IMG/VR virus record: IMGVR_UViG_3300044712_000810
Span: 124,001 to 188,000 of that record
Length of the DNA: 64,000 nucleotides
Reading direction: 5' to 3' (one strand)
Of this stretch, positions 1 to 15,319 are shown one piece after another (positions within the stretch are counted from its first letter, which is position 1; every line of letters begins with the position of its first letter). The position numbers were made by a program, and so were the translations under genes. The notes under the pieces are model-generated. The model was not told where the DNA came from. It saw only the letters and a program-made list of their open reading frames with translations, and searched no databases.

Positions 1-620
1 GCAAGATCATAATATTCAATAGCTTTATCCGGGTTATTTAAATGATAAAGTTCAATATCACCATATAAAATATTTCCAGTCGGTGAATTAGGTTTTTTAC
101 TGAGTATTTGTTCGACAATTAATTGAGCGACATCATATTTTCCAAATTCCATATTAGTTTTAGCTTTATCAATAAGTTCACTCAATTCACCGTGTGGTTC
201 TATAACATTCGATAATTTTTCAACAAGAACATCAACAGAAACTGGTTTAATTACAAAATTTTTAGCACCAAGTTCATGATAAAGTGCTAATATATTTTTA
301 TGAGTCTCTGTAGTAACTATAATGGTTTTAACATTTTTAAAATTTGATGAAATAGTTCCCAAAATTGAAGTTACAAAACTATTTGAAAAAATCATATCAA
401 ACACAAAAATGATATTATTACTATCACATCGTTTAAGTTTTGAATACAAGTCAAGATCATTTGATGCAAATATAATTCGATCTAAAGTTGCACCAATATA
501 CTTAGTTACTGTAATTTTTAATAATTTGAAAAAACTACTATTTTCACCAAGATAAAATATATATCCATTATTTGAATGAAGATAATCGAAAACTGCTTTG
601 TCGTATTTAGTGTTTTTCAT
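1..620 (-). CDS. Receiver-like domain + TPR protein (runs off the window edge; not in ORF track)
   Basis: Manual translation from ATG 620: MKNTKYDK...IFVFDMIF...IIVTTE...ELGAKNFVIKPVSVDVLVEKL (receiver C-terminal KP motif), then TPR-like helices ..KPNSPTGNILYGD..DKAIEYY; open to base 1. Confidence 0.75.
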   Translation of the reverse strand, partial: MKNTKYDKAVFDYLHSNNGYIFYLGENSSFFKLLKITVTKYIGATLDRIIFASNDLDLYSKLKRCDSNNIIFVFDMIFSNSFVTSILGTISSNFKNVKTIIVTTETHKNILALYHELGAKNFVIKPVSVDVLVEKLSNVIEPHGELSELIDKAKTNMEFGKYDVAQLIVEQILSKKPNSPTGNILYGDIELYHLNNPDKAIEYYDL

Positions 621-623
621 CGA

Positions 624-1088
624 TTATCCTCCATCAGTCATTCTACGTAACTCTGTAAGTATATCTCTTACTTTGTCCGCATCTCCATCGATATCTGTAC
701 GACGTCTTGACATTGTTTGATGAGGACTGTGAACATCACCAAGAAAAATACTTTTCTTCAACGTAGACACGTCAGCTTCTATTTCACTAACTTTGCTTAA
801 AATGGTTTGTTGATTTGTAATAATATTATCAACTTTACCTGTTAAAAGTTTCAAATCATCTGAAACTTCTTTGACTTCGCTTTGGTTGTTTTCAACTAAA
901 TGTTTAGTAACCTCAGTATCAACACTTATAGTTCTAACACTTGCTTCGGTTTTATCAAATGTCAATCTCCATCGAAATTTTAATTCGAATATAAGGGCAA
1001 CTAGCGGAGCCATGCAAGTAATCAGAACCCAAGAAATACCTTGCCAAAACGTCACTGAAAATATTTCTTCTTTTATTGGAAATTCCAT
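624..1088 (-). CDS. Membrane-anchored coiled-coil protein
   Basis: N-terminal TM (GISWVLITCMAPLVALIF), heptad-rich C-terminus; tightly packed in operon. Confidence 0.6.
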   Translation of the reverse strand: MEFPIKEEIFSVTFWQGISWVLITCMAPLVALIFELKFRWRLTFDKTEASVRTISVDTEVTKHLVENNQSEVKEVSDDLKLLTGKVDNIITNQQTILSKVSEIEADVSTLKKSIFLGDVHSPHQTMSRRRTDIDGDADKVRDILTELRRMTDGG

Positions 1089-1090
1089 AT

Positions 1091-1420
1091 TTAATTACCC
1101 GCATTACAATTTTTATCAATCTCTGTTAAAATCAATTTATATGCATTTGGCACATGGTCCGATTTTCTCACATAAGTTTGAATTGCCCTTGGCGAATTCA
1201 ATGGATCAGACTTTTTAACACCGGTTAATTTCTCAAATACAATCTCATCAATACATAAATATATTTGTTCAGATTGTGCGGCTCTACTTTTTATTTGATC
1301 GTTAATATTTTTTGTAACTTGTTTACCATGTATACTATAATATAGCACACATATAAATAAACTTAAAATAGTCAATATAGATCCTATGTAACGTGTCATA
1401 TACACTCCATTAGTAAACAA
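1091..1420 (-). CDS. Small membrane-anchored protein
   Basis: One TM segment; overlaps upstream stop. Confidence 0.55.
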   Translation of the reverse strand: MFTNGVYMTRYIGSILTILSLFICVLYYSIHGKQVTKNINDQIKSRAAQSEQIYLCIDEIVFEKLTGVKKSDPLNSPRAIQTYVRKSDHVPNAYKLILTEIDKNCNAGN

Positions 1421-2444
1421 CTATATCATCAGTGAGTATAAGTTTAGAATATCCTAAATAATGAATTCTATTTAAATTCATACTTATAACACTGGTTGTA
1501 TTAAAAACTTGTGGAGTAACCGGTTTTCCATTGACTAATTTAATTAAAATATCACCAGCTTCTTCACCCATTTTTGAAAAAAATGGACCCACACAAGTTG
1601 ATAATCCAATTTTTGCAAATAGTGGATTTATACTAACTTCAAGATGTCTATTATTATGTTTTAATAATTCTTTAATAATTTCTTCTTTGCTTAATGTTTT
1701 CCCAGTCTCAAAGTTAAGTAATCTTTGTGCGGTGAGCATTATTAAACCAGATGGTTTACTTTGTAATTCATTAAGTGCTTTTTTAAATTGATGTAAAGTT
1801 TCACATTTAATAATGACTGGAGTTTCATTCATACTTTTTAAAATATTTCTATATTCATTAGCTATATATGTACTAGTTTCAGAACCATCGTCCGTTATAA
1901 TATAATATTTATCAATAACAACATTATGTTTCTTTAACATTTTAAAATAAGCAGTCATATTTGGAACTTCACATACACCGTATAAATTTTTAAGATTTAA
2001 TTCCGGTCTTTCAGAAATATAATCATTAATTGGTTTATTAACACCTGAAAAAATGACACGATACTTTGAAGACATTGGAATACCAACATATGAAAATGCG
2101 TTATCATCAGTTACATAAATAAAATCAGGTTTATATTTATTTATTTCAGCAATTGCCGTTTGTGATATGGATTTCATAGATTGTGGTGTAGTATTTTTAA
2201 CATTAGTTTCCATATATATAGCTGAGTAATCGATATCAAAGTTTTCATTTAATGCTGCTTTTATAACTTTTTTAAATCCATCATTTTGCGGATCAGTACA
2301 CACATGACCTTCATCATATGAATTAACAATATAAATTTTTAATAGTCTTTTATTTTCAGGATGTACTTGGACTGGTCCAGTCAAAATAATAGCAACGAAA
2401 ATAATAAAACTAAATAATATTTTTGACCAAGACCGAATATTCAT
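1410..2444 (-). CDS. Periplasmic ABC-type substrate-binding-like sensor protein
   Basis: Signal anchor; motifs PDFIYVTDDNA, VIFSGVN, GVCE, KMGEEAG..L.KLVNGKP typical of ABC_sub_bind-like sensory domains. Confidence 0.65.
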   Translation of the reverse strand: MNIRSWSKILFSFIIFVAIILTGPVQVHPENKRLLKIYIVNSYDEGHVCTDPQNDGFKKVIKAALNENFDIDYSAIYMETNVKNTTPQSMKSISQTAIAEINKYKPDFIYVTDDNAFSYVGIPMSSKYRVIFSGVNKPINDYISERPELNLKNLYGVCEVPNMTAYFKMLKKHNVVIDKYYIITDDGSETSTYIANEYRNILKSMNETPVIIKCETLHQFKKALNELQSKPSGLIMLTAQRLLNFETGKTLSKEEIIKELLKHNNRHLEVSINPLFAKIGLSTCVGPFFSKMGEEAGDILIKLVNGKPVTPQVFNTTSVISMNLNRIHYLGYSKLILTDDIVVY

Positions 2445-3082
2445 TATATATCTCCTAAAATTTCCAATATTTTATTTTTTGTTGTTTCGTCAAGAGTTTC
2501 TGCTAACTCTTTAAATTTAGTAATATGAATACTACATCTATTAATTTCAGATAATTGTGTTTCAACATTATCTGCAATCAATACAGTTGCATATGCTATA
2601 CCATCAGCATCATACAATAAACTACATGTAAATTTATAATGAGCTTTTAATGTTTCACAATATAAAATTGATGAAGATCTTTCTTTTTCAATTATACATT
2701 TTTTACGAGGACACTCAGTTGATGATACTTGGCCGAAACCAAAAAAATCATCAACTGTTCTTCCAAGAAAATCTTTATATCTAATATTAAATAATTCTTT
2801 AACTGCTTGGTTTGCACGCATTATGCGCCCGTCTAAATCTGTAATTACGATTAAATATGGTATTGCATCAAACGTATGTTCCCATTCAAGTTTCGCATCA
2901 TAAATCAATTTATTAGTCAGTGATAACTCTTCAAGTGTTTCAGATAATTTATCAACAAGTTCACTAATTTTTGAATTCTTCATATCATTTTCTTCAATTT
3001 GTTTAATATACGTTTGACACGATTCTTCCATTTTAATCATTTCTTCTCTACGTTCATCTGGTGACATATTTATTTTCCTCAA
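2444..3082 (-). CDS. Coiled-coil + PAS domain protein
   Basis: EWEHTFDAIPYLIVITDLDGRIMRANQA...FLGRT..DFFG...CP is a classic PAS signature. Confidence 0.75.
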   Translation of the reverse strand: MRKINMSPDERREEMIKMEESCQTYIKQIEENDMKNSKISELVDKLSETLEELSLTNKLIYDAKLEWEHTFDAIPYLIVITDLDGRIMRANQAVKELFNIRYKDFLGRTVDDFFGFGQVSSTECPRKKCIIEKERSSSILYCETLKAHYKFTCSLLYDADGIAYATVLIADNVETQLSEINRCSIHITKFKELAETLDETTKNKILEILGDI

Positions 3083-3501
3083 CTACCAACAACGGTGTCA
3101 TCTTTTAATAAATTTCGACTTAATAATAATTTGGTTATACAAACTATTATTCTATATTTAATGAGTTCCATTTCATGATGTTTAAAGAAAAAATCATCAG
3201 CACCAAGTTTAATTGCTTTTGAAATATCTTTAAATGAAGTTGAAACTGAACTGACAATAATATAACAGTCTAAGTCACCATCATGACGCATTTTATTTAA
3301 TGCTGGAAGAATATGAAATCCGGTTGTTCCAGGCATAATAAGGTCTAATAAAATGATATCAGGTTTAATTTCATTACATAATTTTAAACATTCTTCGCCA
3401 TTTCTGGCCTCATAAACTTCAAAATCATATAATTCAAGAAGGCCTTTATAGGTTGTTCTTGTCAGCTCGTCATCGTCGACTACTAATATTTTAAATATCA
3501 T
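3079..3501 (-). CDS. Single-domain response regulator (receiver)
   Basis: KILVVDDD...PDIILLDLIMPG..G...GADDFFFK. Confidence 0.85.
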   Translation of the reverse strand: MIFKILVVDDDELTRTTYKGLLELYDFEVYEARNGEECLKLCNEIKPDIILLDLIMPGTTGFHILPALNKMRHDGDLDCYIIVSSVSTSFKDISKAIKLGADDFFFKHHEMELIKYRIIVCITKLLLSRNLLKDDTVVGS

Positions 3502-3513
3502 GACACCCTCAAG

Positions 3514-3696
3514 TTATTGAATATTACGATTATTTTCCTGATTTTGTTTTTGAGCTACTTTAGACATGCCAGACACTTTCTTTAATTCATCCGAATCCTG
3601 TTTACCGCCATCGTTTTTAGATAACTCAGTAACATTGTCATATGGATTCGAAACAATTTCATCATACTCAACTAATACTTTTATAACGGAAATCAT
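3514..3696 (-). CDS. Small protein with MISVIKVLVE leader
   Basis: ORF with RBS; shares N-terminal leader with other late genes. Confidence 0.5.
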   Translation of the reverse strand: MISVIKVLVEYDEIVSNPYDNVTELSKNDGGKQDSDELKKVSGMSKVAQKQNQENNRNIQ

Positions 3697-3706
3697 TATT
3701 ATCTCC

Positions 3707-3967
3707 TTATCTAAGAACTTGTCTTGCTTTTATTTTAGCTCTAGAACCAAGTTTCTTACGCATTCTATCTTTTACTATATTTAATTGTTGACGATAGAAT
3801 TGATATTTCTTATAATCCATTTGATCGGATTTCTTTGCCATGAATACTGTTTCACGACCAGCTAAACGTGAACGTTTTTGAATTGCACCAGATCTAATCA
3901 TACTTGTTTTTACTTCTGCTAATATCATACCAGAAGTAATAGCCTCAAATAAACTATCAAAATTCAT
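3707..3967 (-). CDS. Basic hypothetical protein
   Basis: GGAG RBS; K/R-rich. Confidence 0.6.
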   Translation of the reverse strand: MNFDSLFEAITSGMILAEVKTSMIRSGAIQKRSRLAGRETVFMAKKSDQMDYKKYQFYRQQLNIVKDRMRKKLGSRAKIKARQVLR

Positions 3968-4027
3968 AGTTCCTCCAATAAAATCTGCAATACAGATATG
4001 ACTAAAAATATCTGTATTGCAGACATA

Positions 4028-5863
4028 TTATGCAAAAATATTTTGTTCTAATTCCATATTATGAAGTCTACGACTTAATTCATCAAATGCAATATTTGAT
4101 GTTCCAACATTTACATTTAACCAATTTTTTGGATATGTTGGTGTATATGAAATATGTGCTGCTGATCTGAATAATAGTTTCGATCCATTAACAGATCCTC
4201 CATAAACACCATCAATTATTGTATATGAGTTATTACATTCAACGGATGTCCCACCATTAATAGTTACAGAAAACAAACCATTCGGATTTTGTAAAAGGGG
4301 ATTATTATTTAAATCAAGTGCAATCGGACCTTGGGCATTAATTATCGAACCAGAAAACAGGTTTACTATCCCACCAGTTGCTTCTATTACTGCACGTGTT
4401 GTTTGATTTCCATCAATTGCAAAACTGTGCATTGCGAAGTTTCCACCAGTTATACGAATATTAGGATAATCACCTGAGCAAAAACCTTTAACACCAACAA
4501 GATTAATTACACCATTTGATATGATTAATGGTGAATTTGTAGCAACTGCATTACTATTTAAAGTAATATTGTTTCCATAAAATCCACCACTATTAGTAAC
4601 GGTGCCTTCACACTTAAAATTAGAAACATATGCTTGTGCACTTAATAATGAAACATTACCATTAACAGTAATATCTTTAATTCCAACTTCCACATTAGAT
4701 GCTGTTAAATTGCCATGTATAATAGTAGATGTCTGTCCTAATCCCATAAGTACACAGTTATCATCAATATAAACATCTTCATTATATGTACCCGGCATAA
4801 CAAGTATACAATATGAACCAGACATATAATCAATACATGATGTAATACTTTTAAATGGTTTTGCAACAGTACCATCTGGAGAATATACATCAATACGATT
4901 ACAGTCAACATATCTTAAAGTAGTTGTTTTAATATCTAATGTCGATCTATTTAATTTATAAATAAGATTATCTAATGCATTATATATTGTTGTTGGGACA
5001 GTATTTCCCCATTCCGAAGATGTAGCCGGTGAATAATTAATAGATGCTTTATGTGTTAATTCATCAGCAAGAGTATCAACAGCCTGTGGAATAGTTGTCG
5101 GTAACGGTAATGTCCAATCATTAGGATCAGATGGTATATATTGTAACAAATCCTGTGTTGATGGATTTATAGCAACCCAACTCGATCCATCATTTGATAT
5201 TTCCCATCTGTTTTCAGTCTCATTATATTTAAGACCAACAGTTGGTTGATTTCCACGTTTGACATAAATACCAACATCCTCATATGGAGTTCCACTAATA
5301 AAATCTTTATTAAGAGTAAATGTTGGTGACGGAGTTCCATCAATATCGGCTGTTGTTGATTGTAAATCAATTATTGTTTGTGAATCAACTTTATTATCTA
5401 ATATCGACTGTAAACCAGTAATATTAGATATATTATGTGCATCTGGATTATTTCGACCAATACTATTTGTATGATCAGAAAATGGAGTTTTAAAAAATGG
5501 GCGAACATCAAAAATAGAAGTATCTGTAATTCTATCAGTATCTTGTTCAACAAATATTAATGCTAACGGAAAATCATTTGTTGGAATATCTGGAGGAATC
5601 GGATTTTTAGATTCTGGACCATATGATATTCTTATTTCGCCACCCATGGTTAATGATATAAGTGTCCATCTAGCATTTACAGCTGGTGGAGATATAGTAA
5701 ATGATTGTCCACCAACAAATTCAATATACTTCGTACCGTGATAAAAACCACCATCAGACACTCTAATCTTCATATTTGCTGGTGAATTAGCAGTAACTTT
5801 TAATGTAGCAAAATGAGCATTAGAGCGCCTTAACGTATCACCATATGGAGGTAGCGCTATCAT
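4028..5863 (-). CDS. Virion/tail-associated protein with pectin-lyase-like beta-helix
   Basis: DGTVAKPFKSI...ILVMPGTYNEDV motif followed by N/G/T-rich beta-helix pattern. Confidence 0.65.
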   Translation of the reverse strand: MIALPPYGDTLRRSNAHFATLKVTANSPANMKIRVSDGGFYHGTKYIEFVGGQSFTISPPAVNARWTLISLTMGGEIRISYGPESKNPIPPDIPTNDFPLALIFVEQDTDRITDTSIFDVRPFFKTPFSDHTNSIGRNNPDAHNISNITGLQSILDNKVDSQTIIDLQSTTADIDGTPSPTFTLNKDFISGTPYEDVGIYVKRGNQPTVGLKYNETENRWEISNDGSSWVAINPSTQDLLQYIPSDPNDWTLPLPTTIPQAVDTLADELTHKASINYSPATSSEWGNTVPTTIYNALDNLIYKLNRSTLDIKTTTLRYVDCNRIDVYSPDGTVAKPFKSITSCIDYMSGSYCILVMPGTYNEDVYIDDNCVLMGLGQTSTIIHGNLTASNVEVGIKDITVNGNVSLLSAQAYVSNFKCEGTVTNSGGFYGNNITLNSNAVATNSPLIISNGVINLVGVKGFCSGDYPNIRITGGNFAMHSFAIDGNQTTRAVIEATGGIVNLFSGSIINAQGPIALDLNNNPLLQNPNGLFSVTINGGTSVECNNSYTIIDGVYGGSVNGSKLLFRSAAHISYTPTYPKNWLNVNVGTSNIAFDELSRRLHNMELEQNIFA

Positions 5864-5873
5864 GAATCACCTC

Positions 5874-6350
5874 TTATCTGTAGTCGGCTGTACTTAATTG
5901 TTCTACAACTATTGTACTTGTTCCTTCTACACATTTTATAATAACTTTAGTACAACGACGGAACATAAGTAATATTTCATTAACAACACCACCAATAATA
6001 CTATGTGGATTTGTTGTTTCTGATTCTAAATAAATTTCAAATAAACTATTTGGCGATACGGCAACAAAACGTAACGCACTAGTATGTTCAATATTAATAT
6101 CAATTGTTTCTGTATCACCGGCTGTCATTCCAGTAAATTTATGTGTTGATAATACTGGATTATATAAATCGGTAGTTGGATCAAGCATAAGCATATGTGG
6201 ATAATGTGCTGGATCAATGAAATAATCAATACTTTTTACTTCAGATGATTTAAAAGTATGGTTCATGTATCCAAATACTTTATCAGAATCGTTTTGATAC
6301 TTTGGCATGTATAACACTCCTAGAAATTTAGTGGGGGCATCCCATGACAC
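5874..6350 (-). CDS. Hypothetical protein (start may be ATG 6308)
   Basis: 158-aa ORF in the late operon; GGAG lies 8 nt upstream of ATG 6308. Confidence 0.55.
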   Translation of the reverse strand: MSWDAPTKFLGVLYMPKYQNDSDKVFGYMNHTFKSSEVKSIDYFIDPAHYPHMLMLDPTTDLYNPVLSTHKFTGMTAGDTETIDINIEHTSALRFVAVSPNSLFEIYLESETTNPHSIIGGVVNEILLMFRRCTKVIIKCVEGTSTIVVEQLSTADYR

Positions 6351-6400
6351 CCCCTATTTAAAGAGACCTGTCGCTGGAGGGGTAGTAACCGGTCTCTTCG

Positions 6401-6973
6401 TTACGACAATTTTGAAAAATCATTTCTAACATTATTAACTCTGTTAGCCCATCCACGTAAAAACTCTTTAAGTTTTGGTTTCTTTTCAGCTAAATCATGA
6501 TAAAACTGTAAGCGTTCAAGTAAATATTCATCATCCATATATGATTTATCTTGAATTGCATTATATGCAGCAAGAGTTCCAGGACCAATACGTCCATCAA
6601 CCGCAATATTATTATTGTTATAACGATTAATAACTTTTTGAAGTAAACGTAATCCTGTACCTGGACCAGCATTAACAATCATATCAAACATCGCATATTG
6701 AAGATTGATATTTTCCTCATAACGATCCAAGTCATATTCATCCCAAAAATATTTCTTATATATTTTTATCGCATCTTCTTCTGATAAATTCTTAATATCA
6801 TTTGCATCAATATCGCCATCTTTATCAATATCACCAATTTCTGTATCATGGGTTCCGGCCAAAAATCTTAAACTAATGCCTCGATTAGTTGCTCCGCCGG
6901 GGTCATTAGGATTATTTACCCATCCACCTTCATGAACTAATACTAATGGAATTATTTTGTCAAAGTTTGACAT
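6401..6973 (-). CDS. Endolysin, glycoside hydrolase family 108 + peptidoglycan-binding domain
   Basis: HEGGWVNNPNDPGGATNRGIS catalytic motif; FDMIVNAG, VDGRIGPGTL, FLRGWANRV. Confidence 0.9.
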   Translation of the reverse strand: MSNFDKIIPLVLVHEGGWVNNPNDPGGATNRGISLRFLAGTHDTEIGDIDKDGDIDANDIKNLSEEDAIKIYKKYFWDEYDLDRYEENINLQYAMFDMIVNAGPGTGLRLLQKVINRYNNNNIAVDGRIGPGTLAAYNAIQDKSYMDDEYLLERLQFYHDLAEKKPKLKEFLRGWANRVNNVRNDFSKLS

Positions 6974-6983
6974 AACTTATCTC

Positions 6984-7526
6984 CTATTTAAATCCAAAAA
7001 ATGCAACAGTTGCTATATTAGTTAAAAATAACAATGTTGATAGACCTTTATTCATAAAATTATCAACTTTATGATCATGTCTTTCTTCTCTATATCTATT
7101 TTCACTATCAACCCAAAGATCTCTATATGCTAACGCTTTTAATCTTTCGAGTTCTAAAAATTCTTTATATGCATTAATAGTGTCGATATGTATATTAACT
7201 AATGCTTCTTGTTCCAATACTATGTGTTTATATGTTTTTGTTAATTCAAGTAAAGCTGCAATTTTTCTATATTCATTGAAATCAAACAAAACAACATTCG
7301 CTTGATTTGCATCTTCAGTAAATGAAATTTTATTACCATTAAGAATAGCAAGCTTTCTTTCTGGTCTATCTGGTTTAGGAATATCTTTTAATTTATCCTG
7401 CACATTATACTTTGCAGTTTTTTCAAATTTTAATTCTGGCGGCTTATAAGGTTCAAACTTTGTTGCAGCACAACCAGGTAATAATATAGATAATATTAAC
7501 AAAAACACAACACTTTTACGAATCAT
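6984..7526 (-). CDS. Lipoprotein, o-spanin-like
   Basis: Start reassigned to ATG 7526 (GGAG RBS); MIRKSVVFLLILSILLPGC lipobox; adjacent to endolysin. Confidence 0.55.
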   Translation of the reverse strand: MIRKSVVFLLILSILLPGCAATKFEPYKPPELKFEKTAKYNVQDKLKDIPKPDRPERKLAILNGNKISFTEDANQANVVLFDFNEYRKIAALLELTKTYKHIVLEQEALVNIHIDTINAYKEFLELERLKALAYRDLWVDSENRYREERHDHKVDNFMNKGLSTLLFLTNIATVAFFGFK

Positions 7527-7570
7527 ACTTTCTCCACAAATATATAGAAATAGTTTACTAAGGAGGACAT

Positions 7571-7714
7571 ATGTCCAAAGAACTAACAAAGTTAATAAAA
7601 GACTGGACATTCTATCGAAAGATGGGATATCCAAGAATGGCAGAAGTCATTGATAAAAAAATACGCGAATACTTCAAAAAACACAACATTGAAGTATTAC
7701 CAAGAAAAAGATAG
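7571..7714 (+). CDS. 47-aa basic early peptide inside the lysis cassette
   Basis: Motif TATATAGAAAT at 7541, AGGAGG at 7561, MSKELTKLIKDWTFYRKMGYP... Confidence 0.65.
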   Translation: MSKELTKLIKDWTFYRKMGYPRMAEVIDKKIREYFKKHNIEVLPRKR

Positions 7715-7725
7715 GACTACACATC

Positions 7726-7956
7726 CTACTTTTTCATACCTTCTTTTTTTGCTTGATTTTCCATCTTTTCAAGACGATCATAATAATCAGGTATTTCTGA
7801 TAAATGATCTTTAGCTATTGCTATTGCTACAGTTGGACTATTAGTGTGTTCCTTTTCTATTTTAACACCATGTTTTAATTCTTTATTATTGAAGGTTTTA
7901 TCAGGCACCCTGTCGTGCCTCCCAACATGTTGCAGAGTCTTTATAACACTTATCAT
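7726..7956 (-). CDS. DUF5661-like protein
   Basis: GVKIEKEHT...IAKDHLSEIPDYYDRLEKME matches a family recalled from large viruses. Confidence 0.7.
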   Translation of the reverse strand: MISVIKTLQHVGRHDRVPDKTFNNKELKHGVKIEKEHTNSPTVAIAIAKDHLSEIPDYYDRLEKMENQAKKEGMKK

Positions 7957-8320
7957 ATTTTGTTCCTAAATATTTTAAAATTATTTTACGAATATCACCA
8001 TATGAATATGGTTTAAAAATAATTTCATTAAATCCTGCTTGTTTCATTTCAAATATTGCTTCATCATCAGTAAATGCAGTTTGAGCTATAATCGGAGTTG
8101 AATAATTTGAATCTCTAATAAACTGTGCTATTTCAATTCCGTTTATATTAGGAAGTTGTATATCTAATAAAAATAAATCATATGTATTATTCATTATTTT
8201 ATTAATAGCTTCATAACCATCGTCGCATACATCATAATCCAAACCAAGTTTATCACAAATAGTCATTAAATACATTTCGTTGACTGCATTATCTTCTACT
8301 ATTAATATTCTAGGTCGCAT
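7901..8320 (-). CDS. Response regulator receiver (hybrid-kinase type)
   Basis: RILIVEDNAVN, DLFLLDIQLPNINGIE, PIIAQTA, IIFKPY. Confidence 0.9.
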   Translation of the reverse strand: MRPRILIVEDNAVNEMYLMTICDKLGLDYDVCDDGYEAINKIMNNTYDLFLLDIQLPNINGIEIAQFIRDSNYSTPIIAQTAFTDDEAIFEMKQAGFNEIIFKPYSYGDIRKIILKYLGTKYDKCYKDSATCWEARQGA

Positions 8321-8332
8321 GGACCACCTACT

Positions 8333-9871
8333 TTAGTCAATACGTTCAAATGGCAAAATAACTGAAAATACAGTTCCTTTACCAGGTTCACTACAAACGT
8401 GAATAGACCCTCCCATAAGTTCAATAAAACGAAGACAGATATTTAATCCTAGTCCAGTTCCAACGATAGTTTTAGTAAAACTAGTTTCAACTCTTGAAAA
8501 ACTATCAAAAATTTTATCTTGATATGGAGAAGGAATTCCAATACCGGAGTCTTCAACATTTAATCGAAGTTTATTATTTGATATTAATGATATGTGTAAA
8601 TTAACAAAACCTTTTTCTGTAAATTTAATAGCATTTCCTAATAAATTTATAAGAACTTGTTTAAATTTACTATCATCAATTTTAATAGATTGTGGTATAT
8701 CATCATCAATTTTAATATCAAATGTTAAACCTTTTTCTAATGTTTGTAATGTAACAATATTAGTCACAGATGAAACGCATCTTCTGAATACAGTTGATTT
8801 TGGTTCAAATTTATGAATACCATTTTCTATTTTAGATAAATCTAATATATCTTCAATTAATGCTAATAATGTTTTTGTTGCCTTTTTAGCATTACTTAAA
8901 TATATTTTTTGTTTTTCTAAATCTGTAGTATGAGAAAGTATTTCAATCATACCAAATACACCATTTAATGGTGTTCTAATTTCATGTGACATATTAGCTA
9001 AGAATGTACTTTTAGTTCTATTTGCATATTCAGCATGTTCTTTTGCTATTTGTAATTCTTTTACAGTATTTTGCAATTCATATACACGATCATCAATTAT
9101 TTGAAATAAATCCATTTCACGTTTTATAAGTCGATTTAAAAGATACATTGCTAAAATTAAAATAACAAACGTAAAGAATATAATTAAAATCGTTTTAAAT
9201 AACATATCAGAGAAATGAACTTCAAAATCGAAAATTTCAAAAATCTTACGTTCAGATAAACTTACACCAATAGTTAAATATATATCTGAATTATTTAATT
9301 TAAATGATCTCCAAGAAATATATTCTTTACCAAGATCATGTGACCATATATACCAATCATTACCATTAGTTGAATTTGAAATTCCAGAAAATAAATTATC
9401 AATATTCTTAGCACCACTCCAAATTTGATTTTTGAATACCGTTTTAATGTCATCTTGGTTTGGATGATTTCGATAATCTTTATCATATATAACCATTTCT
9501 GGAGTATACATAAATACATCATTACTATTAAATAGTTGAATATCATCAACAAAATATGGAACAATAAATTCATTTATAATCTTTAAATCAGGACAATCTG
9601 GTCTACTTTTCTTTTTTAATTCAAACTCTAATTGTATATTTTGTTCAATTATTTTTAAAAATTCATTTTCTAATAAATAAATACCATTAACGGCACTTCG
9701 AACTTCCCGATCATTATGTTCAAAATAATAATACACAAAAGTACAAGCTTGTACTATCCATATTACTGGCATTAGGATCTTTAAGATCTGATTTATCATA
9801 CGAATTTTATTTTTCATTTTATATCCTACTTTATAAATCGTCTTTATTCCATCCTTTATTAACGGCATCAT
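8333..9871 (-). CDS. Membrane sensor histidine kinase
   Basis: Two TMs flanking an extracytoplasmic domain; H-box [16 protein letters not shown]-box [15 protein letters not shown]1 [10 protein letters not shown]2 GTGLGL. Confidence 0.93.
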
Positions 9872-10193
9872 CTATTTTTTGATGGTCGGTTTCTTTCATA
9901 ATATTATCTATTTTTGCGGCAGCTTCATCAACAGTTTTACGAATAAGTACTTGTTTCTCAACAGATTGATTTTCTAATCCTTTTATATTCGCTTCTATCT
10001 TTGCTTGTTCCGCTTGAATAGATTCTATCTTTTTCATACCTTCATCTTGTTTTTGCGTATGTAAAATATCTTTTAAATCTGATAATTTTCCAGATTTAAA
10101 CCAATTTAAGATATAAAATCCACCACCAAATAATAATACAGAACCAAATCCATATTTAATTATATTTGTCCAGTCCAACATTTGACCGTCCAT
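9831..10193 (-). CDS. N-terminally anchored coiled-coil protein, i-spanin-like
   Basis: Single N-terminal TM then coiled coil; upstream of lipoprotein and endolysin. Confidence 0.45.
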
Positions 10194-10202
10194 AATAACT
10201 CC

Positions 10203-10406
10203 TTAAACTTTAGTCTCTTGTGGTTTAGTTTTTATAGGTTTGATTTGATTTTTTGTCATATCATGTTTATCTAATGAATCATTATTAACTTGTACATGTA
10301 ATTTATTTCCAGCGTACCCTGGATTATTTTTTAATTTATGATATGGTTTTTTGGTTTTATCATTATCATTTTTAAAAGGTACTAAATTTTCAATTATTGA
10401 AATCAT
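10203..10406 (-). CDS. Small basic protein with MISIIENL leader
   Basis: ORF coupled to upstream gene. Confidence 0.5.
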   Translation of the reverse strand: MISIIENLVPFKNDNDKTKKPYHKLKNNPGYAGNKLHVQVNNDSLDKHDMTKNQIKPIKTKPQETKV

Positions 10407-10783
10407 TATTCACTCTCTTCTTGATGGATGTGACAATGCCGTTCGTCATGTTTTTTATTTTTATATGAACTACAATCCGTCTTAACAAAAAACCAATTAC
10501 TATCCTTCCATTTATTCATTTCAACTCTATAAAAACCATCATCCGTTTCTATTAAAATACTAAACATTCCAATTTTAACAATTTTACCAATATATCCATC
10601 GACTTCAACATAATTTAAAGTTGAAATATTTGAATTAAATCTAAATTGAAAATAACTAACAAGAGTCTCAATTAATGTTTTAGCATATGTAACTAAAAAG
10701 AAAATAACGGCAGTCCATAATACCATTTCAAATAAATCGGCTCGAATGATTTTCATTATTTCAGCATAAATTTTATCTTCCAT
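10406..10783 (-). CDS. MscS-like membrane protein (TM + beta domain)
   Basis: TM then VEVDGYIGKIVKIGMFSILIETDDG resembling the MscS middle beta-domain. Confidence 0.55.
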   Translation of the reverse strand: MEDKIYAEIMKIIRADLFEMVLWTAVIFFLVTYAKTLIETLVSYFQFRFNSNISTLNYVEVDGYIGKIVKIGMFSILIETDDGFYRVEMNKWKDSNWFFVKTDCSSYKNKKHDERHCHIHQEESE

Positions 10784-10846
10784 ATTATTACTCCATTTTT
10801 AATATTATACTTTTTCATATAGAAATGATACTGGCGGAGGTTTTAT

Positions 10847-11578
10847 ATGACAGTGATTCATAAACCGAATCCAATATTAGATTATCAATGTCTAATAGTT
10901 GGTGATGTACACAATGAATTCGGAACATTAAATACACTAATAAATCAACACAAACCAGATTTTTTATTTCAAGTTGGTGATTTTGGTTTTTGGCCAAGAT
11001 TAGTTACACCGAAACAAAGATCATTTGCATGGGCATCTGGAATTAAACGTTATCGAACTATGGATGTAACAGAAATAAAAAATCACAATACTAAAATACA
11101 CTGGTGCGATGGAAATCACGAAGATCATTGGACTTTAAAAATGTTTAGAGAAGATAATCAAGTTGCACCAAATGTGTTTTATCAAAAACGTGGAAGTACA
11201 ATAACTCTTCCGGATGGAAGAAATGTATTATTTATGGGTGGCGCAGATTCTATAGATAAAGATTGTAGAATATTAGGCCGCGATTGGTTTCCAGAAGAAA
11301 TTATAACACAAGCCGATATAGAAAATTTACCAGATATTCAAATCGATATCGTTATATCTCATACATGTCCTGAATGTTTAGTTGCAGACATGTTACCTTA
11401 CAATAGTTTTAAATTTAATGATCCATCGACTCAAGCTCTACAATATGTTCTTGAGAAATATGATCCTCAATATTGGTTCTTTGGTCATTGGCATCACTTT
11501 AAAAGATTTAAACGCGGTTATACAACATTTACATGTTTAAATATGTTACCATGTTCTGGAAGTTGGTGCTACCTTTAA
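10847..11578 (+). CDS. Calcineurin-like metallophosphoesterase
   Basis: GDVH, QVGDFG, DGNHED, ISHTCP, FGHWH motifs. Confidence 0.9.
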   Translation: MTVIHKPNPILDYQCLIVGDVHNEFGTLNTLINQHKPDFLFQVGDFGFWPRLVTPKQRSFAWASGIKRYRTMDVTEIKNHNTKIHWCDGNHEDHWTLKMFREDNQVAPNVFYQKRGSTITLPDGRNVLFMGGADSIDKDCRILGRDWFPEEIITQADIENLPDIQIDIVISHTCPECLVADMLPYNSFKFNDPSTQALQYVLEKYDPQYWFFGHWHHFKRFKRGYTTFTCLNMLPCSGSWCYL

Positions 11579-11623
11579 TATTCATAAATTTCATATAGAA
11601 ATTTATATATTAGGAGGTATACC

Positions 11624-11737
11624 ATGAACACTCTAAATGACTTTCTGTATAAGTTTCCGGAAGTTATCATAATTCCGGCTGGTGTCGTCATCGATGCTAT
11701 CTTGATGTATGGCTTCGTACTGTACATCTGCAAATAA
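11624..11737 (+). CDS. 37-aa hydrophobic peptide
   Basis: Motif at 11592, AGGAGG RBS, MNTLNDFLYKFPEVIIIPAG... Confidence 0.55.
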   Translation: MNTLNDFLYKFPEVIIIPAGVVIDAILMYGFVLYICK

Positions 11738-11780
11738 CACGAACCTGGGGCTGAAATGCCCCAGCTTATTGGAGCTCTTT

Positions 11781-11969
11781 ATGAGTAAAAAGAAAAAGAA
11801 GCCTAATATAAAAGGTAACACCATTATCATCAGTGAAGATGATATTAAAATCCGAAAAAATTCTTGTCCACCAACAAAGAAACACGAGGATAAGAAAAAA
11901 TATAATCGCAAAGAGAAACACAAAGAGGAGGCGTATGGTATATCCATACGCCTCCGTTTTTTTAGTTAG
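11781..11969 (+). CDS. Lysine-rich small protein
   Basis: GGAG RBS; MSKKKKKPNIKG... Confidence 0.45.
   Translation: MSKKKKKPNIKGNTIIISEDDIKIRKNSCPPTKKHEDKKKYNRKEKHKEEAYGISIRLRFFS
11927..11963 (+). terminator. Rho-independent terminator
   Basis: GGAGGCGTATGG/CCATACGCCTCC 12-bp stem plus T-run. Confidence 0.75.
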
Positions 11970-12426
11970 GAATATTCTTAATGTCTTCAACGACATTAAT
12001 TCTTTTTATTTTTTCCACTTTAAATTGCTCACGAACAACAACAACTGTTCCAGTAAGACCTAAATTGAATGTACACCATGCATTAAATAAATTAATTAAT
12101 TCAGCTGATGTTTTACAATTTGGAACAATATGATAAGCTAATGCCGTTGATACAAAAAACGGAAATGCCCACATCCAAATTTTAACAGATGTAACAGATT
12201 CGATAACTTTAGTAAGAACCGAAAACCAATAATCTTTCATTGAAATTTCACTGGTTGATGATTCTAAATTATCTGTCGTGTTTTCAATAACAGCTGGAGT
12301 TGTATCTGATTCTTTAATTACAGTTGTAGTAACTGTATCTGTTTTATTATCTTGTTTAATATCAATCTTAATAGGAGATGGTTGTATTTTTTGAGAATCA
12401 TCATTATCAACTAAATTAGGATCCAT
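11962..12426 (-). CDS. Two-TM membrane protein, possible holin
   Basis: Acidic N-terminus, two hydrophobic segments, basic C-terminus. Confidence 0.45.
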   Translation of the reverse strand: MDPNLVDNDDSQKIQPSPIKIDIKQDNKTDTVTTTVIKESDTTPAVIENTTDNLESSTSEISMKDYWFSVLTKVIESVTSVKIWMWAFPFFVSTALAYHIVPNCKTSAELINLFNAWCTFNLGLTGTVVVVREQFKVEKIKRINVVEDIKNIPN

Positions 12427-12438
12427 AGTATATCTCCA

Positions 12439-13371: not shown

Positions 13372-13382
13372 ATTTTGATCTC

Positions 13383-15305: not shown

Positions 15306-15319
15306 ATATGATTACCTCT

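What the first reader, a model, noticed from the sequence alone, without database searches (positions are those of the whole stretch)
6401..10783. Sensor histidine kinase and receiver inserted inside a phage lysis cassette
Seen on the minus strand, in order: MscS-like membrane protein, small protein, i-spanin-like protein, full sensor HK (intact H, N, G1, G2 boxes), stand-alone receiver (13 bp downstream, hybrid-kinase-type sequence), DUF5661-like protein, o-spanin-like lipoprotein, GH108 endolysin. Established: complete two-component systems are rare in lytic phage genomes. Inference: the phage may sense a periplasmic cue and relay it to lysis timing or to host phosphorelays. The receiver has no output domain, so it would act by protein contact or as a phosphate sink.
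Basis: partly seen in the sequence, partly recalled or inferred. Interest (0 to 1): 0.7.

Follow-up and report, generated by a model that had tools for sequence, protein, structure and literature searches.

The report
Phage sensor kinase splitting a spanin-like pair
A 315-kb uncultured phage carries an intact membrane sensor kinase and its receiver, inserted exactly between two envelope (lysis-type) genes that are adjacent in related phages, so the virus may sense its surroundings during infection, although what the signal controls is unknown.

Summary
On the minus strand of 6401-10783 lie a mini-MscS-like membrane protein, a small protein, a single-pass coiled-coil protein (g120), a 512-aa HisKA/HATPase_c sensor kinase, a 139-aa stand-alone receiver 12 nt downstream, a DUF5661 protein, a lipoprotein and a GH108 endolysin. 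The record is a complete 314,837-bp phage genome with terminal repeats and no integrase match.

The kinase and receiver are the two halves of a hybrid-type (TorS/BarA/ArcB/LuxQ-class) kinase, written as two genes. All catalytic residues are intact. The periplasmic domain is modelled with high confidence as a single PDC/Cache-like fold that Pfam does not detect.

One relative with proteins 37-80% identical keeps the same gene order. In eight more distant relatives the g120 gene directly abuts the lipoprotein gene, usually 1-4 nt apart, and no kinase, receiver or DUF5661 was detected. The signalling block therefore sits inside a conserved spanin-like gene pair.

The lipoprotein also has a C-terminal membrane helix, which is u-spanin topology.

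The phage has no Hpt and no output-bearing regulator. It does have a second kinase-less signalling operon and a PAS-HD-GYP protein. A role in lysis timing rests on gene position only and is untested.

The parts
11962..12426 (-). 154-aa protein whose C-terminal hydrophobic half is homologous to 85-130-aa membrane proteins of relatives (holin-like; function unproven). Its homologue is the first gene of the membrane block in relatives. A strong hairpin terminator follows at 11927-11955.
   Evidence: blastp gives 34-37% identity to the 125-130-aa proteins that precede the g120 homologue in L164 and L168 and to those of L079 and L080. Terminator. No Pfam match.
10847..11578 (+). Metallophosphoesterase gene on the opposite strand, divergent from the kinase operon.
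   Evidence: Pfam Metallophos E 5.8e-15; phrog_1649 E 6.8e-30.
10786..10831 (-). One copy of a genome-wide 46-nt motif with an ATTTC-TATAT-GAAA core and an A-rich tail, ending 3 nt before the g125 ATG. Candidate promoter or operator of the kinase operon.
   Evidence: PWM score 33.3 bits. It is one of 75 sites of at least 18 bits in the genome. Sequence.
10406..10783 (-). g125: one membrane helix plus an MscS beta-domain-like fold ('mini-MscS'). First gene of the six-gene operon.
   Evidence: Pfam MS_channel_2nd E 0.01, below cut-off. Atlas matches to viral MS_channel_2nd families score 0.95 with TM 0.70-0.78. Membrane helix. 39% identical to the homologue in L019. Homologues occur in the relatives' membrane block.
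10203..10406 (-). g67: small hydrophilic protein that starts with MISII. Its start overlaps the g125 stop by 1 nt.
   Evidence: ORF list. No family match. The relative L019 has four small MIS-initial genes at this position.
9831..10193 (-). g120: i-spanin-like protein with a glycine-rich N-terminal membrane helix and a coiled-coil region. The kinase ORF overlaps its 3' end by 41 nt.
   Evidence: 59% identical to the L019 homologue, with a near-invariant membrane helix. In eight relatives its homologue lies directly upstream of the lipoprotein gene. No o-spanin ORF is embedded in it.
8333..9871 (-). Sensor histidine kinase of 512 aa (alternative start at 9817). Order: TM1, periplasmic PDC/Cache-like domain of about 170 aa, TM2, DHp domain (His296), catalytic domain. 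It ends where hybrid kinases continue into a receiver.
   Evidence: Pfam. NCBIfam best matches are TorS, BarA, ArcB and LuxQ cores. Membrane helices. AlphaFold2 model with pLDDT 94.3. Foldseek matches TlpA, Tlp1 and WalK sensor domains. Catalytic motifs.
7901..8320 (-). RR1: stand-alone receiver of 139 aa, of the hybrid-kinase D1 type, 12 nt after the kinase stop. Its tail overlaps the DUF5661 start by 56 nt.
   Evidence: Pfam E 2e-24. Best NCBIfam matches are the receiver segments of LuxQ, ArcB, TorS and BarA. 39% identical to the receiver of hybrid kinase P0009. Conserved residues. Comparison with RR2.
7726..7956 (-). DUF5661 protein of 76 aa, the last gene of the operon and the most conserved one (80% identity to the relative).
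   Evidence: Pfam E 3.9e-13. The family is phage-dominated and is fused elsewhere to HD, nucleotidyltransferase, CBS and OsmC domains.
7571..7714 (+). 47-aa basic ORF on the opposite strand with a perfect AAGGAGG ribosome-binding site. It separates the kinase genes from the lipoprotein and endolysin genes.
   Evidence: Sequence. The relative L019 has three unrelated opposite-strand small genes at the same place. No family match.
6984..7526 (-). 180-aa lipoprotein: signal peptide, LPGC lipobox, Pro-rich linker, small beta-sheet, then one long helix that ends in a C-terminal membrane segment. Spanin-like with u-spanin topology.
   Evidence: RBS and start. Hydropathy. AlphaFold2 model with pLDDT 81.5 and a helix spanning residues 83-179. 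Homologues, with canonical lipoboxes and conserved C-terminal membrane helices in relatives.
6401..6973 (-). GH108 endolysin with a PG_binding_3 domain, 10 nt downstream of the lipoprotein gene. No signal or SAR sequence.
   Evidence: Pfam. phrog_315 endolysin E 9.8e-46. 49% identical to the L019 endolysin. Hydropathy.
1..3967 (-). Second, kinase-less signalling operon. Order: g86, g60 (starts MISVIK), receiver RR2 (3079-3501), coiled-coil plus PAS protein (2444-3082), ABC_sub_bind-like periplasmic binding protein (1410-2444), two single-pass membrane proteins, then a receiver-like plus TPR protein that runs off the window start.
   Evidence: ORFs. Pfam. Atlas match for the binding protein with TM 0.85. 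The genes are separated by 12 nt or less or overlap.

Best explanation
This is a phage-borne two-component phosphotransfer pair of cellular origin. It is a hybrid-type sensor kinase written as two genes (kinase, then receiver), and a DUF5661 gene follows it. The three-gene block sits exactly in the junction of a tightly coupled spanin-like gene pair (g120, then the lipoprotein) in the membrane/lysis cassette of a jumbo-phage lineage. It has stayed intact in two phages whose proteins have diverged to about 40-50% identity.

Proposed mechanism:
1. In the infected cell the kinase inserts into the inner membrane. Its periplasmic single PDC/Cache-like domain binds an unknown extracytoplasmic cue.
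2. The kinase autophosphorylates on His296 and passes the phosphoryl group to Asp53 of the adjacent receiver RR1.
3. RR1 has no output domain and the phage has no Hpt. RR1-P must therefore act by protein contact, or hand the phosphoryl group to a host Hpt.

My preferred target is the membrane machinery co-expressed with it (mini-MscS-like g125, g120, and the spanin-like lipoprotein and endolysin next door). That would couple an envelope or periplasmic signal to the timing or execution of lysis.

Shown here: gene content, intact catalytic residues, the sensor fold, conservation in a relative, and the position inside the gene pair. Inferred: phosphotransfer, the cue, and every step after RR1.
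For: Domains and motifs:
- Pfam domains and intact H, N, G1, F and G2 boxes in the kinase, and D/D/T/K in the receiver.
- The kinase core and RR1 each match best the corresponding segment of hybrid kinases TorS, BarA, ArcB and LuxQ.
- RR1 is 39% identical to the receiver of a hybrid kinase whose core is 50% identical to this kinase.
- RR1 scores higher than the phage's other receiver against the receivers of 94 hybrid kinases (median 57 bits against 40).

Sensor domain:
- The sensor region has about 100 homologues. Nine cellular ones checked by Pfam carry hybrid kinase, GGDEF-HD-GYP, PAS or HWE outputs.
- The AlphaFold2 model has pLDDT 94.3 and a PDC topology.
- Foldseek matches TlpA and Tlp1 Cache domains and the WalK extracellular domain.

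Operon structure:
- The six genes overlap or lie no more than 12 nt apart.

Conservation:
- The relative L019 keeps the order g125 homologue, small MIS genes, g120 homologue, kinase, receiver, DUF5661, opposite-strand genes, lipoprotein, endolysin, at 37-80% identity.
- In eight further relatives the g120 homologue abuts the lipoprotein gene (1-4 nt in seven), and none has a kinase, receiver or DUF5661.

Genome context:
- The genome is a complete phage record with terminal repeats, a large terminase, a tail sheath and no integrase match.
- There is no Hpt and no GGDEF in the genome.
Against: - No experiment or transcript data exist. The run that holds the sequence gave no usable pieces.
- An opposite-strand ORF lies between the kinase operon and the lipoprotein and endolysin genes. 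The two sets of genes may therefore be transcribed separately and at different times.
- No holin was identified. The spanin assignment is by topology and gene order only.
- The phage has another signalling operon and a PAS-HD-GYP protein several kb away. The kinase may serve those rather than lysis.
- Only one independent relative carries the kinase; L019 and L020 are the same sequence.
- Gain in this lineage and loss elsewhere could not be told apart, because the comparison has no root.
- dN/dS between the two phages is saturated and uninformative.
- The complex prediction of the kinase dimer, RR1 and DUF5661 gave no answer.
Confidence: 0.5

Rival explanations
1. Entry point into a host phosphorelay. 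RR1 is a D1-type receiver, and the normal partner of such a receiver is an Hpt. The phage encodes no Hpt, so RR1-P would feed, or RR1 would drain, a host Hpt and its terminal regulators. This would reprogramme host behaviour such as motility, biofilm formation or stress responses during infection.
For: RR1 matches best the receiver segments of LuxQ, ArcB, TorS and BarA, all of which pass phosphate to Hpt domains. No Hpt is detectable in the phage genome even at E <= 1. Two of the cellular homologues checked that share the sensor domain are kinase-receiver-Hpt proteins.
Against: The host is unknown, so no host Hpt can be named. The split pair and its conserved operon partners (g125, g120, DUF5661) are not explained by this reading. 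Nothing was tested.
Confidence: 0.2
2. Hub of a phage-internal signalling network unrelated to lysis. The single kinase would phosphorylate RR1, RR2 and perhaps the receiver-like TPR protein. The PAS protein, the periplasmic binding protein and the PAS-HD-GYP phosphodiesterase would be further inputs and outputs, for example lowering host c-di-GMP or degrading cyclic-nucleotide defence signals. The position in the lysis cassette would then be an accident of insertion.
For: There is only one kinase but two good receivers plus a degenerate one in the genome. RR2 sits in an eight-gene operon with a PAS protein and an ABC_sub_bind-like binding protein, which are modules that cellular kinases carry fused. 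A PAS-HD-GYP protein lies at genome 116681-117757. HD-GYP enzymes in jumbo phages have been proposed as counter-defence (PMC7824862).
Against: RR2 is only 24% identical to RR1 over 62 residues and resembles NarL and RssB receivers rather than the hybrid type. The other genes are 4-15 kb away. Their presence in the relative is unknown, because that contig is only 7.4 kb.
Confidence: 0.2
3. Passenger gene block (moron) with no role in the phage cycle, or one on its way to decay.
For: The block is absent from eight relatives that share the flanking genes. The kinase and receiver are the least conserved genes of the cluster between the two carriers, at 42% and 37% identity.
Against: Both ORFs are intact in two phages that have diverged beyond synonymous saturation, and every catalytic residue is kept. 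G+C has fallen to phage level, 26%. The kinase start overlaps g120 in both phages.
Confidence: 0.07
4. Host-derived chimera or assembly artefact.
For: The nearest kinase cores are all cellular. Many 'phage' records with kinase matches are bacterial genome contigs filed as phage, and the one opened was bacterial DNA.
Against: Both flanks hold tail-fibre-like ORFs; the PHROGs-supported phage genes are the GH108 endolysin here and the terminase and tail sheath elsewhere in the genome, and composition is uniform. The genome is complete with terminal repeats. The same arrangement was assembled from a different sample. A genome-wide phage motif sits at the operon start.
Confidence: 0.02

Closest known systems
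Hybrid sensor kinases of the TorS / BarA / ArcB / LuxQ class (HisKA kinase, D1 receiver, Hpt phosphorelay)
   Same: The kinase core is 45-50% identical to cellular hybrid kinases. The best NCBIfam matches for both the core and the receiver are to this class. It is membrane-anchored with a periplasmic sensor domain.
   Different: Kinase and receiver are separate polypeptides, with a stop codon and a 12-nt spacer. The split is conserved in the relative, where the spacer is 5 nt. There is no Hpt domain or protein anywhere in the phage. It is encoded by a virus.
Hybrid kinases in other huge phages and giant viruses (for example the 735-kb phage LR756501, a 329-kb IMG/VR phage with terminal repeats, and many GVMAG contigs)
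   Same: They are virus-encoded kinases with a HisKA core that carries the same FLANMSH / EIRTPLNG H-box motif. 169 IMG/VR loci were found. LR756501 has a 737-aa kinase-receiver fusion plus a separate 125-aa receiver.
   Different: In 77 of the 80 best IMG/VR loci the kinase and one or two receivers are fused in one ORF; in the other three the kinase ORF is cut by the contig end or the receiver lies on another ORF. None has GH108, DUF5661, g120, g125 or the lipoprotein within 4 kb. None shares this sensor domain. The 329-kb phage shows no large-terminase similarity.
Phage spanins: two-component Rz/Rz1 or T4 PseT.3/PseT.2, and the unimolecular T1 gp11 (Kongari et al. 2018, PMC6139136)
   Same: g120 has an N-terminal membrane helix plus a coiled coil, like an i-spanin. 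The lipoprotein has a lipoylation signal, like an o-spanin, and additionally a C-terminal membrane helix, like the u-spanin gp11. The two genes abut in relatives, as in the 'separated' spanin architecture. The lipoprotein gene lies next to the endolysin gene here.
   Different: An i-spanin-like gene paired with a lipoprotein that already has u-spanin topology is not one of the architectures described. The periplasmic part of the lipoprotein is one long helix, whereas that of gp11 is beta-rich (PMC6139136). No functional test has been done.
T4 lysis inhibition (holin T, antiholin RI)
   Same: Conceptually it is a phage system that reads a periplasmic signal and changes lysis timing. This comparison rests on my own knowledge.
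   Different: There is no sequence or domain relationship. T4 uses direct protein binding, not phosphotransfer. A link between this kinase and lysis is only a hypothesis.
Phage-encoded kinases reported as auxiliary genes (phoR in soil phages, PMC10987575; kinases beside curli genes in pelagiphages, PMC9599517)
   Same: They are histidine kinase genes on phage genomes, flanked by viral genes and with conserved active-site residues.
   Different: As far as I read them, those papers count phoR and phoB as separate single auxiliary genes, or report kinases beside curli genes, and describe no adjacent kinase-receiver pair; they interpret the kinases as acting on host regulators or on adjacent cargo genes. 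Here the kinase comes with its own receiver, inside a spanin-like gene pair.

Membership tests
Two-component system (HisKA-class kinase plus receiver) | DHp (HisKA) domain with the phospho-accepting His in an H box | tested here: met
   Pfam HisKA E 2.8e-19. His296 within [12 protein letters not shown] is invariant against four other kinases.
Two-component system (HisKA-class kinase plus receiver) | Catalytic ATP-binding domain with N, G1, F and G2 boxes | tested here: met
   Pfam HATPase_c E 3.1e-26. N409/N413, D441-G443-G445, F455/F458 and G471-G475 are all invariant.
Two-component system (HisKA-class kinase plus receiver) | Receiver with an acidic pair, a phospho-accepting Asp, a conserved Thr/Ser and a conserved Lys | tested here: met
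   E9-D10, D53, T81 and K103 are present. D53 and K103 are invariant in a seven-sequence alignment.
Two-component system (HisKA-class kinase plus receiver) | Phosphotransfer from the kinase to this receiver | not testable with these tools
   Only adjacency (12 nt) and family match support it. The complex prediction scored the DUF5661 chain only and gave no answer.
Hybrid histidine kinase phosphorelay (TorS/BarA/ArcB/LuxQ type) | Kinase core and D1 receiver on one polypeptide | tested here: not met
   A stop codon at 8333-8335 is followed by a 12-nt spacer and a new ATG at 8320. The same split occurs in L019. The cellular hybrid kinases aligned and the viral relatives are fused.
Hybrid histidine kinase phosphorelay (TorS/BarA/ArcB/LuxQ type) | Hpt domain or protein that receives the phosphoryl group from D1 | tested here: not met
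   PF01627 has no match in the 314,837-bp genome at E <= 1, while the control genomes do match.
Hybrid histidine kinase phosphorelay (TorS/BarA/ArcB/LuxQ type) | Sequence affinity of both the core and the receiver to this class | tested here: met
   NCBIfam top matches for both proteins are TorS, BarA, ArcB and LuxQ, all below the equivalog cut-offs because the matches are partial.
Cache / PDC extracytoplasmic sensor domains | Match to a Cache family profile | tested here: not met
   No Pfam match in residues 1-285. No PDB sequence match to the family profile.
Cache / PDC extracytoplasmic sensor domains | Long N-terminal helix followed by a five-stranded PAS-like alpha/beta fold, between two membrane helices | tested here: met
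   AlphaFold2 model with pLDDT 94.3 and matching secondary-structure order. Foldseek top hits are TlpA and Tlp1 dCache domains and the WalK/YycG extracellular domain (E 8e-5 to 1e-3, TM by target up to 0.62).
Unimolecular spanin (T1 gp11 type) | N-terminal lipoprotein signal with a lipobox Cys | tested here: met
   A signal helix is followed by LPGC. Relatives have canonical L[AI][SA]C lipoboxes. PMC6139136 reports non-consensus lipoboxes in spanins.
Unimolecular spanin (T1 gp11 type) | C-terminal transmembrane domain | tested here: met
   The hydrophobic C-terminal 19 residues are conserved in all homologues. They form the end of a helix spanning residues 83-179 in the model.
Unimolecular spanin (T1 gp11 type) | Outer-membrane disruption (complements an Rz/Rz1 defect) | not testable with these tools
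   Needs a lambda Rz/Rz1 complementation assay.
Two-component spanin (i-spanin plus o-spanin) | i-spanin: N-terminal membrane helix with a periplasmic coiled coil | tested here: inconclusive
   g120 has a glycine-rich hydrophobic N-terminus below my hydropathy threshold and a heptad-rich C-terminal part. Its topology was not determined. The near-invariant membrane helix is unusual for a mere anchor.
Two-component spanin (i-spanin plus o-spanin) | The two genes are embedded, overlapped or adjacent | tested here: not met
   In this window 2.3 kb and four genes separate them, and no o-spanin ORF is embedded in g120. In eight relatives the two genes do abut.
GH108 endolysin | Glyco_hydro_108 domain above the Pfam cut-off, with a peptidoglycan-binding domain | tested here: met
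   77.5 bits against a cut-off of 21.2, plus PG_binding_3 at 55.4 bits. phrog_315 endolysin.
MscS mechanosensitive channel | MS_channel_2nd beta domain above cut-off, together with the pore-lining and C-terminal domains | tested here: not met
   16.4 bits against a cut-off of 20.2. The protein is only 125 aa with one membrane helix. It belongs instead to viral 'mini' families with this domain.

The most novel reading that the evidence does not exclude
The phage times or gates host lysis with its own periplasm-sensing phosphotransfer pair. The Cache-like kinase would read an envelope cue such as superinfection, cell-wall fragments or a rhizosphere metabolite. The phosphorylated stand-alone receiver would then act directly on the co-transcribed membrane proteins (mini-MscS-like g125, g120) or on the spanin-like lipoprotein. 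This would be a two-component analogue of T4 lysis inhibition. It may be one arm of a larger, disassembled phage sensory network comprising the binding protein, PAS protein, second receiver, receiver-TPR protein and HD-GYP protein.
Probability: 0.2. Interest if true: 0.85.

Novelty: new variant of a known kind. Interest (0 to 1): 0.65.

Why it matters
Phages are usually thought to read the state of the host through host regulators or small dedicated proteins. Here an intact transmembrane sensor kinase comes with its own receiver. It has been retained across deep divergence and is wedged into the envelope-disruption genes of a virulent jumbo phage. That makes a concrete question testable: can a virus sense the world outside the cytoplasm of its host and adjust the end of infection, or the host's behaviour, accordingly?

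The locus also offers three further things:
- a natural example of a hybrid kinase split into two genes;
- an uncharacterised Cache-like sensor family shared with Spirochaetota, Desulfobacterota, Chloroflexota and methanogens;
- a spanin-like pair of unusual architecture, an i-spanin-like protein with a helical lipoprotein that has its own inner-membrane anchor.

Tried and rejected
1. Nucleotide search of the region against GenBank phages found no match.
2. Single-protein scans of IMG/VR with the kinase, the endolysin and the large terminase found no relatives. The best large-terminase hit in GenBank phages is only 25% identical.
3. The DUF5661 alignment found nothing in IMG/VR or in the first metagenome scan. 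The sensor-domain alignment found nothing in IMG/VR.
4. tblastn of g125 and g120 against GenBank phages found no match.
5. The complex prediction of the kinase dimer, RR1 and DUF5661 returned 'no answer' and is evidence neither way.
6. Laying the contigs of the one run that holds the sequence gave only spurious matches of 18-29 nt, so it provides no independent assembly check.
7. dN/dS between the two carriers has dS of 0.6-1.1, which is saturated, so the ratios of 0.13-0.75 are not interpretable.
8. PADLOC gave only weak generic receiver matches, so nothing suggests a known defence system. Rfam found nothing in 1-16000. No boundary repeats flank the inserted block.
9. MW462191, the best 'phage' kinase hit in GenBank, turned out to be bacterial chromosomal DNA and was rejected as a precedent.
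10. I first read the genome-wide ATTTCTATATGAAA motif as a simple promoter. Only 15 of 75 copies have a same-strand ORF start within 100 nt, and 62 are on one strand. I therefore cite it only as a phage-specific motif at the operon start.
11. The idea that the 216-aa TTG-initiated form of the lipoprotein ORF is real was rejected. Met37 follows a GGAG site, and the homologues start there.

Full report
**What the window is.** The window is bases 124,001-188,000 of a single 314,837-bp IMG/VR virus record with direct terminal repeats, rated complete.
- G+C is 26-33% across the first 24 kb of the window. The kinase region is the lowest, at 25.8% for 8001-10000.
- The genome encodes a large terminase, a tail sheath, a DNA polymerase and a UvsX-like recombinase.
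- It has no match to the tyrosine-integrase family (PF00589).
- The only run found to hold the sequence is a rhizosphere metagenome.
- The best large-terminase match in 50,697 GenBank phage records is 25% identical, to an uncultured 484-kb phage. This is a deep, unsampled jumbo-phage lineage.

**Check of the observation.**
- Pfam confirms HisKA plus HATPase_c in the 512-aa ORF (8333-9871), Response_reg in the 139-aa ORF (7901-8320), DUF5661 in the 76-aa ORF (7726-7956), and Glyco_hydro_108 plus PG_binding_3 in the 190-aa ORF (6401-6973). All are far above the curated cut-offs.
- The H box (His296), N, G1, F and G2 boxes are invariant in an alignment with cellular hybrid kinases.
- The receiver has the acidic pair, Asp53, Thr81 and Lys103.
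- The 'MscS-like' protein (10406-10783) is below the Pfam cut-off. The ESM Atlas places it among viral families of about 110-130 aa that carry one membrane helix and the MscS beta domain.
  - The kinase-receiver gap is 12 nt.
  - The lipoprotein starts at Met37 (window 7526), behind a GGAG site.
  - A 47-aa ORF on the opposite strand, with a perfect AAGGAGG site (7571-7714), lies between the DUF5661 and lipoprotein genes.

**Anatomy of the kinase pair.**
- The kinase has two membrane helices that flank about 170 extracytoplasmic residues. The second helix runs straight into the DHp domain, with no HAMP domain.
- Its catalytic half is 45-50% identical to cellular kinases, nearly all of which are hybrids with a fused receiver.
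- NCBIfam ranks TorS, BarA, ArcB, LuxQ and RcsC first for the kinase core. It ranks the receiver segments of LuxQ, ArcB, TorS and BarA first for RR1.
- RR1 is 39% identical to the C-terminal receiver of hybrid kinase P0009.
- RR1 scores better than the phage's other receiver against the receivers of 94 hybrid kinases.
- The phage protein ends exactly where the hybrids continue into their receiver. The pair is therefore a hybrid kinase written as two genes.
- The genome has no Hpt, no GGDEF and no second kinase.

**The sensor domain.**
- Pfam sees nothing in the N-terminal half.
- An exhaustive HMMER search with residues 1-257 found about 100 proteins. The best by far is a 514-aa kinase (P0121, E 3e-35).
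- Nine cellular proteins checked by Pfam carry the same N-terminal domain in front of hybrid kinase-receiver-Hpt, GGDEF-HD-GYP, PAS or HWE-kinase outputs.
- In reference genomes the domain occurs in Spirochaetota, Desulfobacterota, Chloroflexota, Myxococcota and Methanomicrobia.
- AlphaFold2 on a 63-sequence alignment gave pLDDT 94.3. The topology is a long helix, a five-stranded alpha/beta PAS-like domain, then a helix.
- Foldseek matched the Cache domains of TlpA and Tlp1 and the extracellular domain of WalK/YycG.
- It is a single PDC/Cache-like sensor of an undescribed sequence family. The ligand is unknown.

**Operon structure.**
- From g125 to DUF5661 the six genes overlap or lie no more than 12 nt apart: 1-nt overlap, 9-nt gap, 41-nt overlap, 12-nt gap, 56-nt overlap.
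- Upstream, a 63-nt divergent spacer separates g125 from a plus-strand metallophosphoesterase gene.
- A 46-nt motif that recurs 75 times in the genome ends 3 nt before the g125 ATG.
- Downstream, the opposite-strand ORF intervenes. The lipoprotein and endolysin genes follow, 10 nt apart, and then tail-related genes run to a strong hairpin at 3983-4024.
- The kinase genes and the lipoprotein and endolysin genes may therefore be transcribed separately.

**Relatives that carry the block.**
- P0121 lies on a 7.4-kb metagenome contig, recovered twice as the identical sequence (L019 and L020).
- Its gene order is: g125 homologue, four small genes, g120 homologue, kinase, receiver, DUF5661, three opposite-strand small genes, lipoprotein, a Gly-rich 111-aa protein, GH108 endolysin, a Gly-rich 113-aa protein, then the homologue of window ORF 5874-6350.
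- Identities to the window proteins are 39, 59, 42, 37, 80, 53, 49 and 42%.
- Kinase and receiver are split there too, and the kinase start again overlaps the g120 homologue.
- Synonymous sites are saturated. Intact ORFs and invariant catalytic residues are thus the evidence for selection.

**Relatives that lack the block. This is the decisive comparison.**
- A scan of JGI metagenomes with the three-sequence lipoprotein alignment found nine further loci, with the lipoprotein 36-41% identical over its length in eight and a short end fragment in the ninth.
- In all eight loci that hold upstream sequence, the g120 homologue lies directly upstream of the lipoprotein gene.
- The lipoprotein ATG falls 1-4 nt after, or overlaps, the g120 stop in seven of them. 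The gap is 72 nt in the eighth.
- The fuller loci show one co-oriented block. Its order is:
  - a 125-130-aa membrane protein, homologue of window 11962-12426;
  - the g120 homologue;
  - the lipoprotein;
  - a Pro-rich membrane protein;
  - the mini-MscS homologue.
- None of the nine loci has a kinase, receiver, DUF5661 or GH108 match.
- The kinase, receiver and DUF5661 genes, with the opposite-strand ORF(s), therefore occupy exactly the junction of a gene pair that is otherwise translationally coupled.
- The direction (gain here, or loss elsewhere) is not rooted. I favour gain, because the kinase is of cellular type and the tight coupling looks ancestral.

**Are the flanks lysis genes?**
- The endolysin assignment is secure.
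- The lipoprotein has a signal peptide and a lipobox: LPGC here, and canonical L[AI][SA]C in relatives. It also has a conserved C-terminal membrane segment.
- The AlphaFold2 model (pLDDT 81.5) shows a Pro-rich linker, a small sheet and one helix spanning residues 83-179 that ends in that segment.
- This is the topology that defines unimolecular spanins, namely an N-terminal lipoylation signal plus a C-terminal membrane domain (PMC6139136). The periplasmic part is helical rather than beta-rich as in T1 gp11.
- g120 looks like an i-spanin and pairs with the lipoprotein gene in relatives. Its membrane helix is almost invariant, and no o-spanin ORF is embedded in it.
- An i-spanin-like protein paired with a lipoprotein that has its own inner-membrane anchor is not a described spanin architecture.
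- No holin was identified. The candidates are the protein at 11962-12426, g125 and g120.
- The cassette label is thus reasonable but rests on topology and gene order.

**Wider signalling repertoire.** A second tight operon lies immediately downstream in the direction of transcription, past the 3983-4024 hairpin. It has no kinase. Its genes are:
- a stand-alone receiver, RR2 (3079-3501);
- a coiled-coil plus PAS protein;
- an ABC_sub_bind-like periplasmic binding protein with an N-terminal anchor (Atlas TM 0.85);
- two single-pass membrane proteins;
- a receiver-like plus TPR protein.

A PAS-HD-GYP protein lies at genome 116681-117757. HD-GYP enzymes have been noted in jumbo phages and proposed as counter-defence (PMC7824862). 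The kinase may therefore feed more than one receiver.

**How rare is this?**
- Kinase-like matches occur in 177 of 50,697 GenBank 'phage' records. Many of the best rows are bacterial genome contigs or very short records filed as phage, and the one such record opened was bacterial DNA.
- One listed precedent that is plausibly phage is the 735-kb phage LR756501, which has a fused 737-aa hybrid kinase and a separate receiver.
- A scan of IMG/VR found 169 loci with the same H-box motif. Many are giant-virus bins, and several are phage contigs of 277-505 kb.
- In 77 of the best 80 the kinase and receiver(s) are fused in one ORF, and the other three are cut or ambiguous. None has the neighbours seen here.
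- None shares this sensor domain.
- Single kinase genes have been reported in soil phages and pelagiphages (PMC10987575, PMC9599517).
- The main text of the huge-phage survey PMC7162821 does not mention kinases.
- Virus-borne hybrid kinases are thus a known, though barely studied, kind. The split form, the sensor family and the position inside a spanin-like pair are new.

**Mechanism and verdict.**
- Shown: an intact, conserved, phage-resident sensor kinase and cognate-type receiver, with a periplasmic Cache-like input, sitting inside a membrane/lysis gene block.
- Inferred: phosphotransfer from His296 to Asp53, and output by protein contact or through a host Hpt.
- My preferred reading is that the output acts on the co-expressed envelope machinery and so on lysis. 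It is favoured only by operon membership and conserved position, and I give that last step about 0.2-0.25.
- The host-phosphorelay reading and the phage-network reading are about as likely.
- Chimera and decaying passenger are unlikely.
- The finding is real, more interesting than a stray host gene, and testable with synthetic genes.

Noticed in passing
window 1-3967 (minus strand), continuing to genome 123298: A second, kinase-less signalling operon. It holds stand-alone receiver RR2, a coiled-coil plus PAS protein, an ABC_sub_bind-like periplasmic binding protein with an N-terminal anchor, two single-pass membrane proteins and a receiver-like plus TPR protein. These are modules that cellular sensor kinases carry fused; here they are separate genes.
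   Followed up: partly
genome 116681-117757 (locus L007:4681-5757, minus strand): A 358-aa PAS plus HD-GYP (HD_5, E 1.7e-38) protein lies among tail-fibre-like genes. It is the only HD-GYP in the genome, and there is no GGDEF.
   Followed up: partly
whole genome; copies at window about 10786-10831 and about 11562-11607 (minus strand): A 46-nt motif with an imperfectly palindromic core, ATTTC-TATAT-GAAA(T), and an A-rich tail. There are 75 sites of at least 18 bits. 62 are on the minus strand regardless of local gene strand, 49 are intergenic, and only 15 have a same-strand ORF start within 100 nt. In plus-strand gene blocks it follows GC hairpins at gene ends. It could be a promoter, an operator or some strand-specific signal; this is unresolved.
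   Followed up: partly
window 3696, 7956 and 10406 (ORF starts, minus strand); genome 110809; L019 418-1296 and 3586: Small proteins that begin with MIS[VIL][ILV], often MISVIK. There are four in this genome, three of them inside the two signalling operons, including DUF5661. The relative L019 has five (four consecutive small genes and the DUF5661 gene). This may be a shared N-terminal tag or a paralogous family. Function is unknown.
   Followed up: no
window 7571-7714 (plus strand): A 47-aa basic ORF with a perfect AAGGAGG site, antisense to the surrounding genes. The relative has three unrelated opposite-strand small genes in the same slot, so the slot is conserved but its content is not.
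   Followed up: partly
window 6984-7526 and 9831-10193; loci L163-L171: A spanin-like pair of unusual architecture. It combines an i-spanin-like protein with a near-invariant glycine-rich membrane helix and a lipoprotein that has one roughly 95-residue helix ending in its own C-terminal membrane anchor. Its close homologues are few: three proteins in the first 5.8-billion-protein search, and nine more metagenome loci after a profile scan.
   Followed up: yes
L019 5598-5933 and 6549-6890: The relative has two glycine-zipper-like small membrane proteins (111 and 113 aa) flanking its endolysin gene. They have no counterpart in this genome and may be its holin or antiholin.
   Followed up: no
L168 542-6346: A 1,934-aa protein in a distant relative, just upstream of the membrane block. 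Its central roughly 1,000 residues are almost pure serine with periodic arginines.
   Followed up: no
L079 3262-3837 and L080 614-1009: In a third, more distant group the g120 homologue is followed by a SIS (GmhA-like sugar isomerase) gene rather than by the lipoprotein gene. The downstream partner of g120 is therefore not fixed across the family.
   Followed up: no
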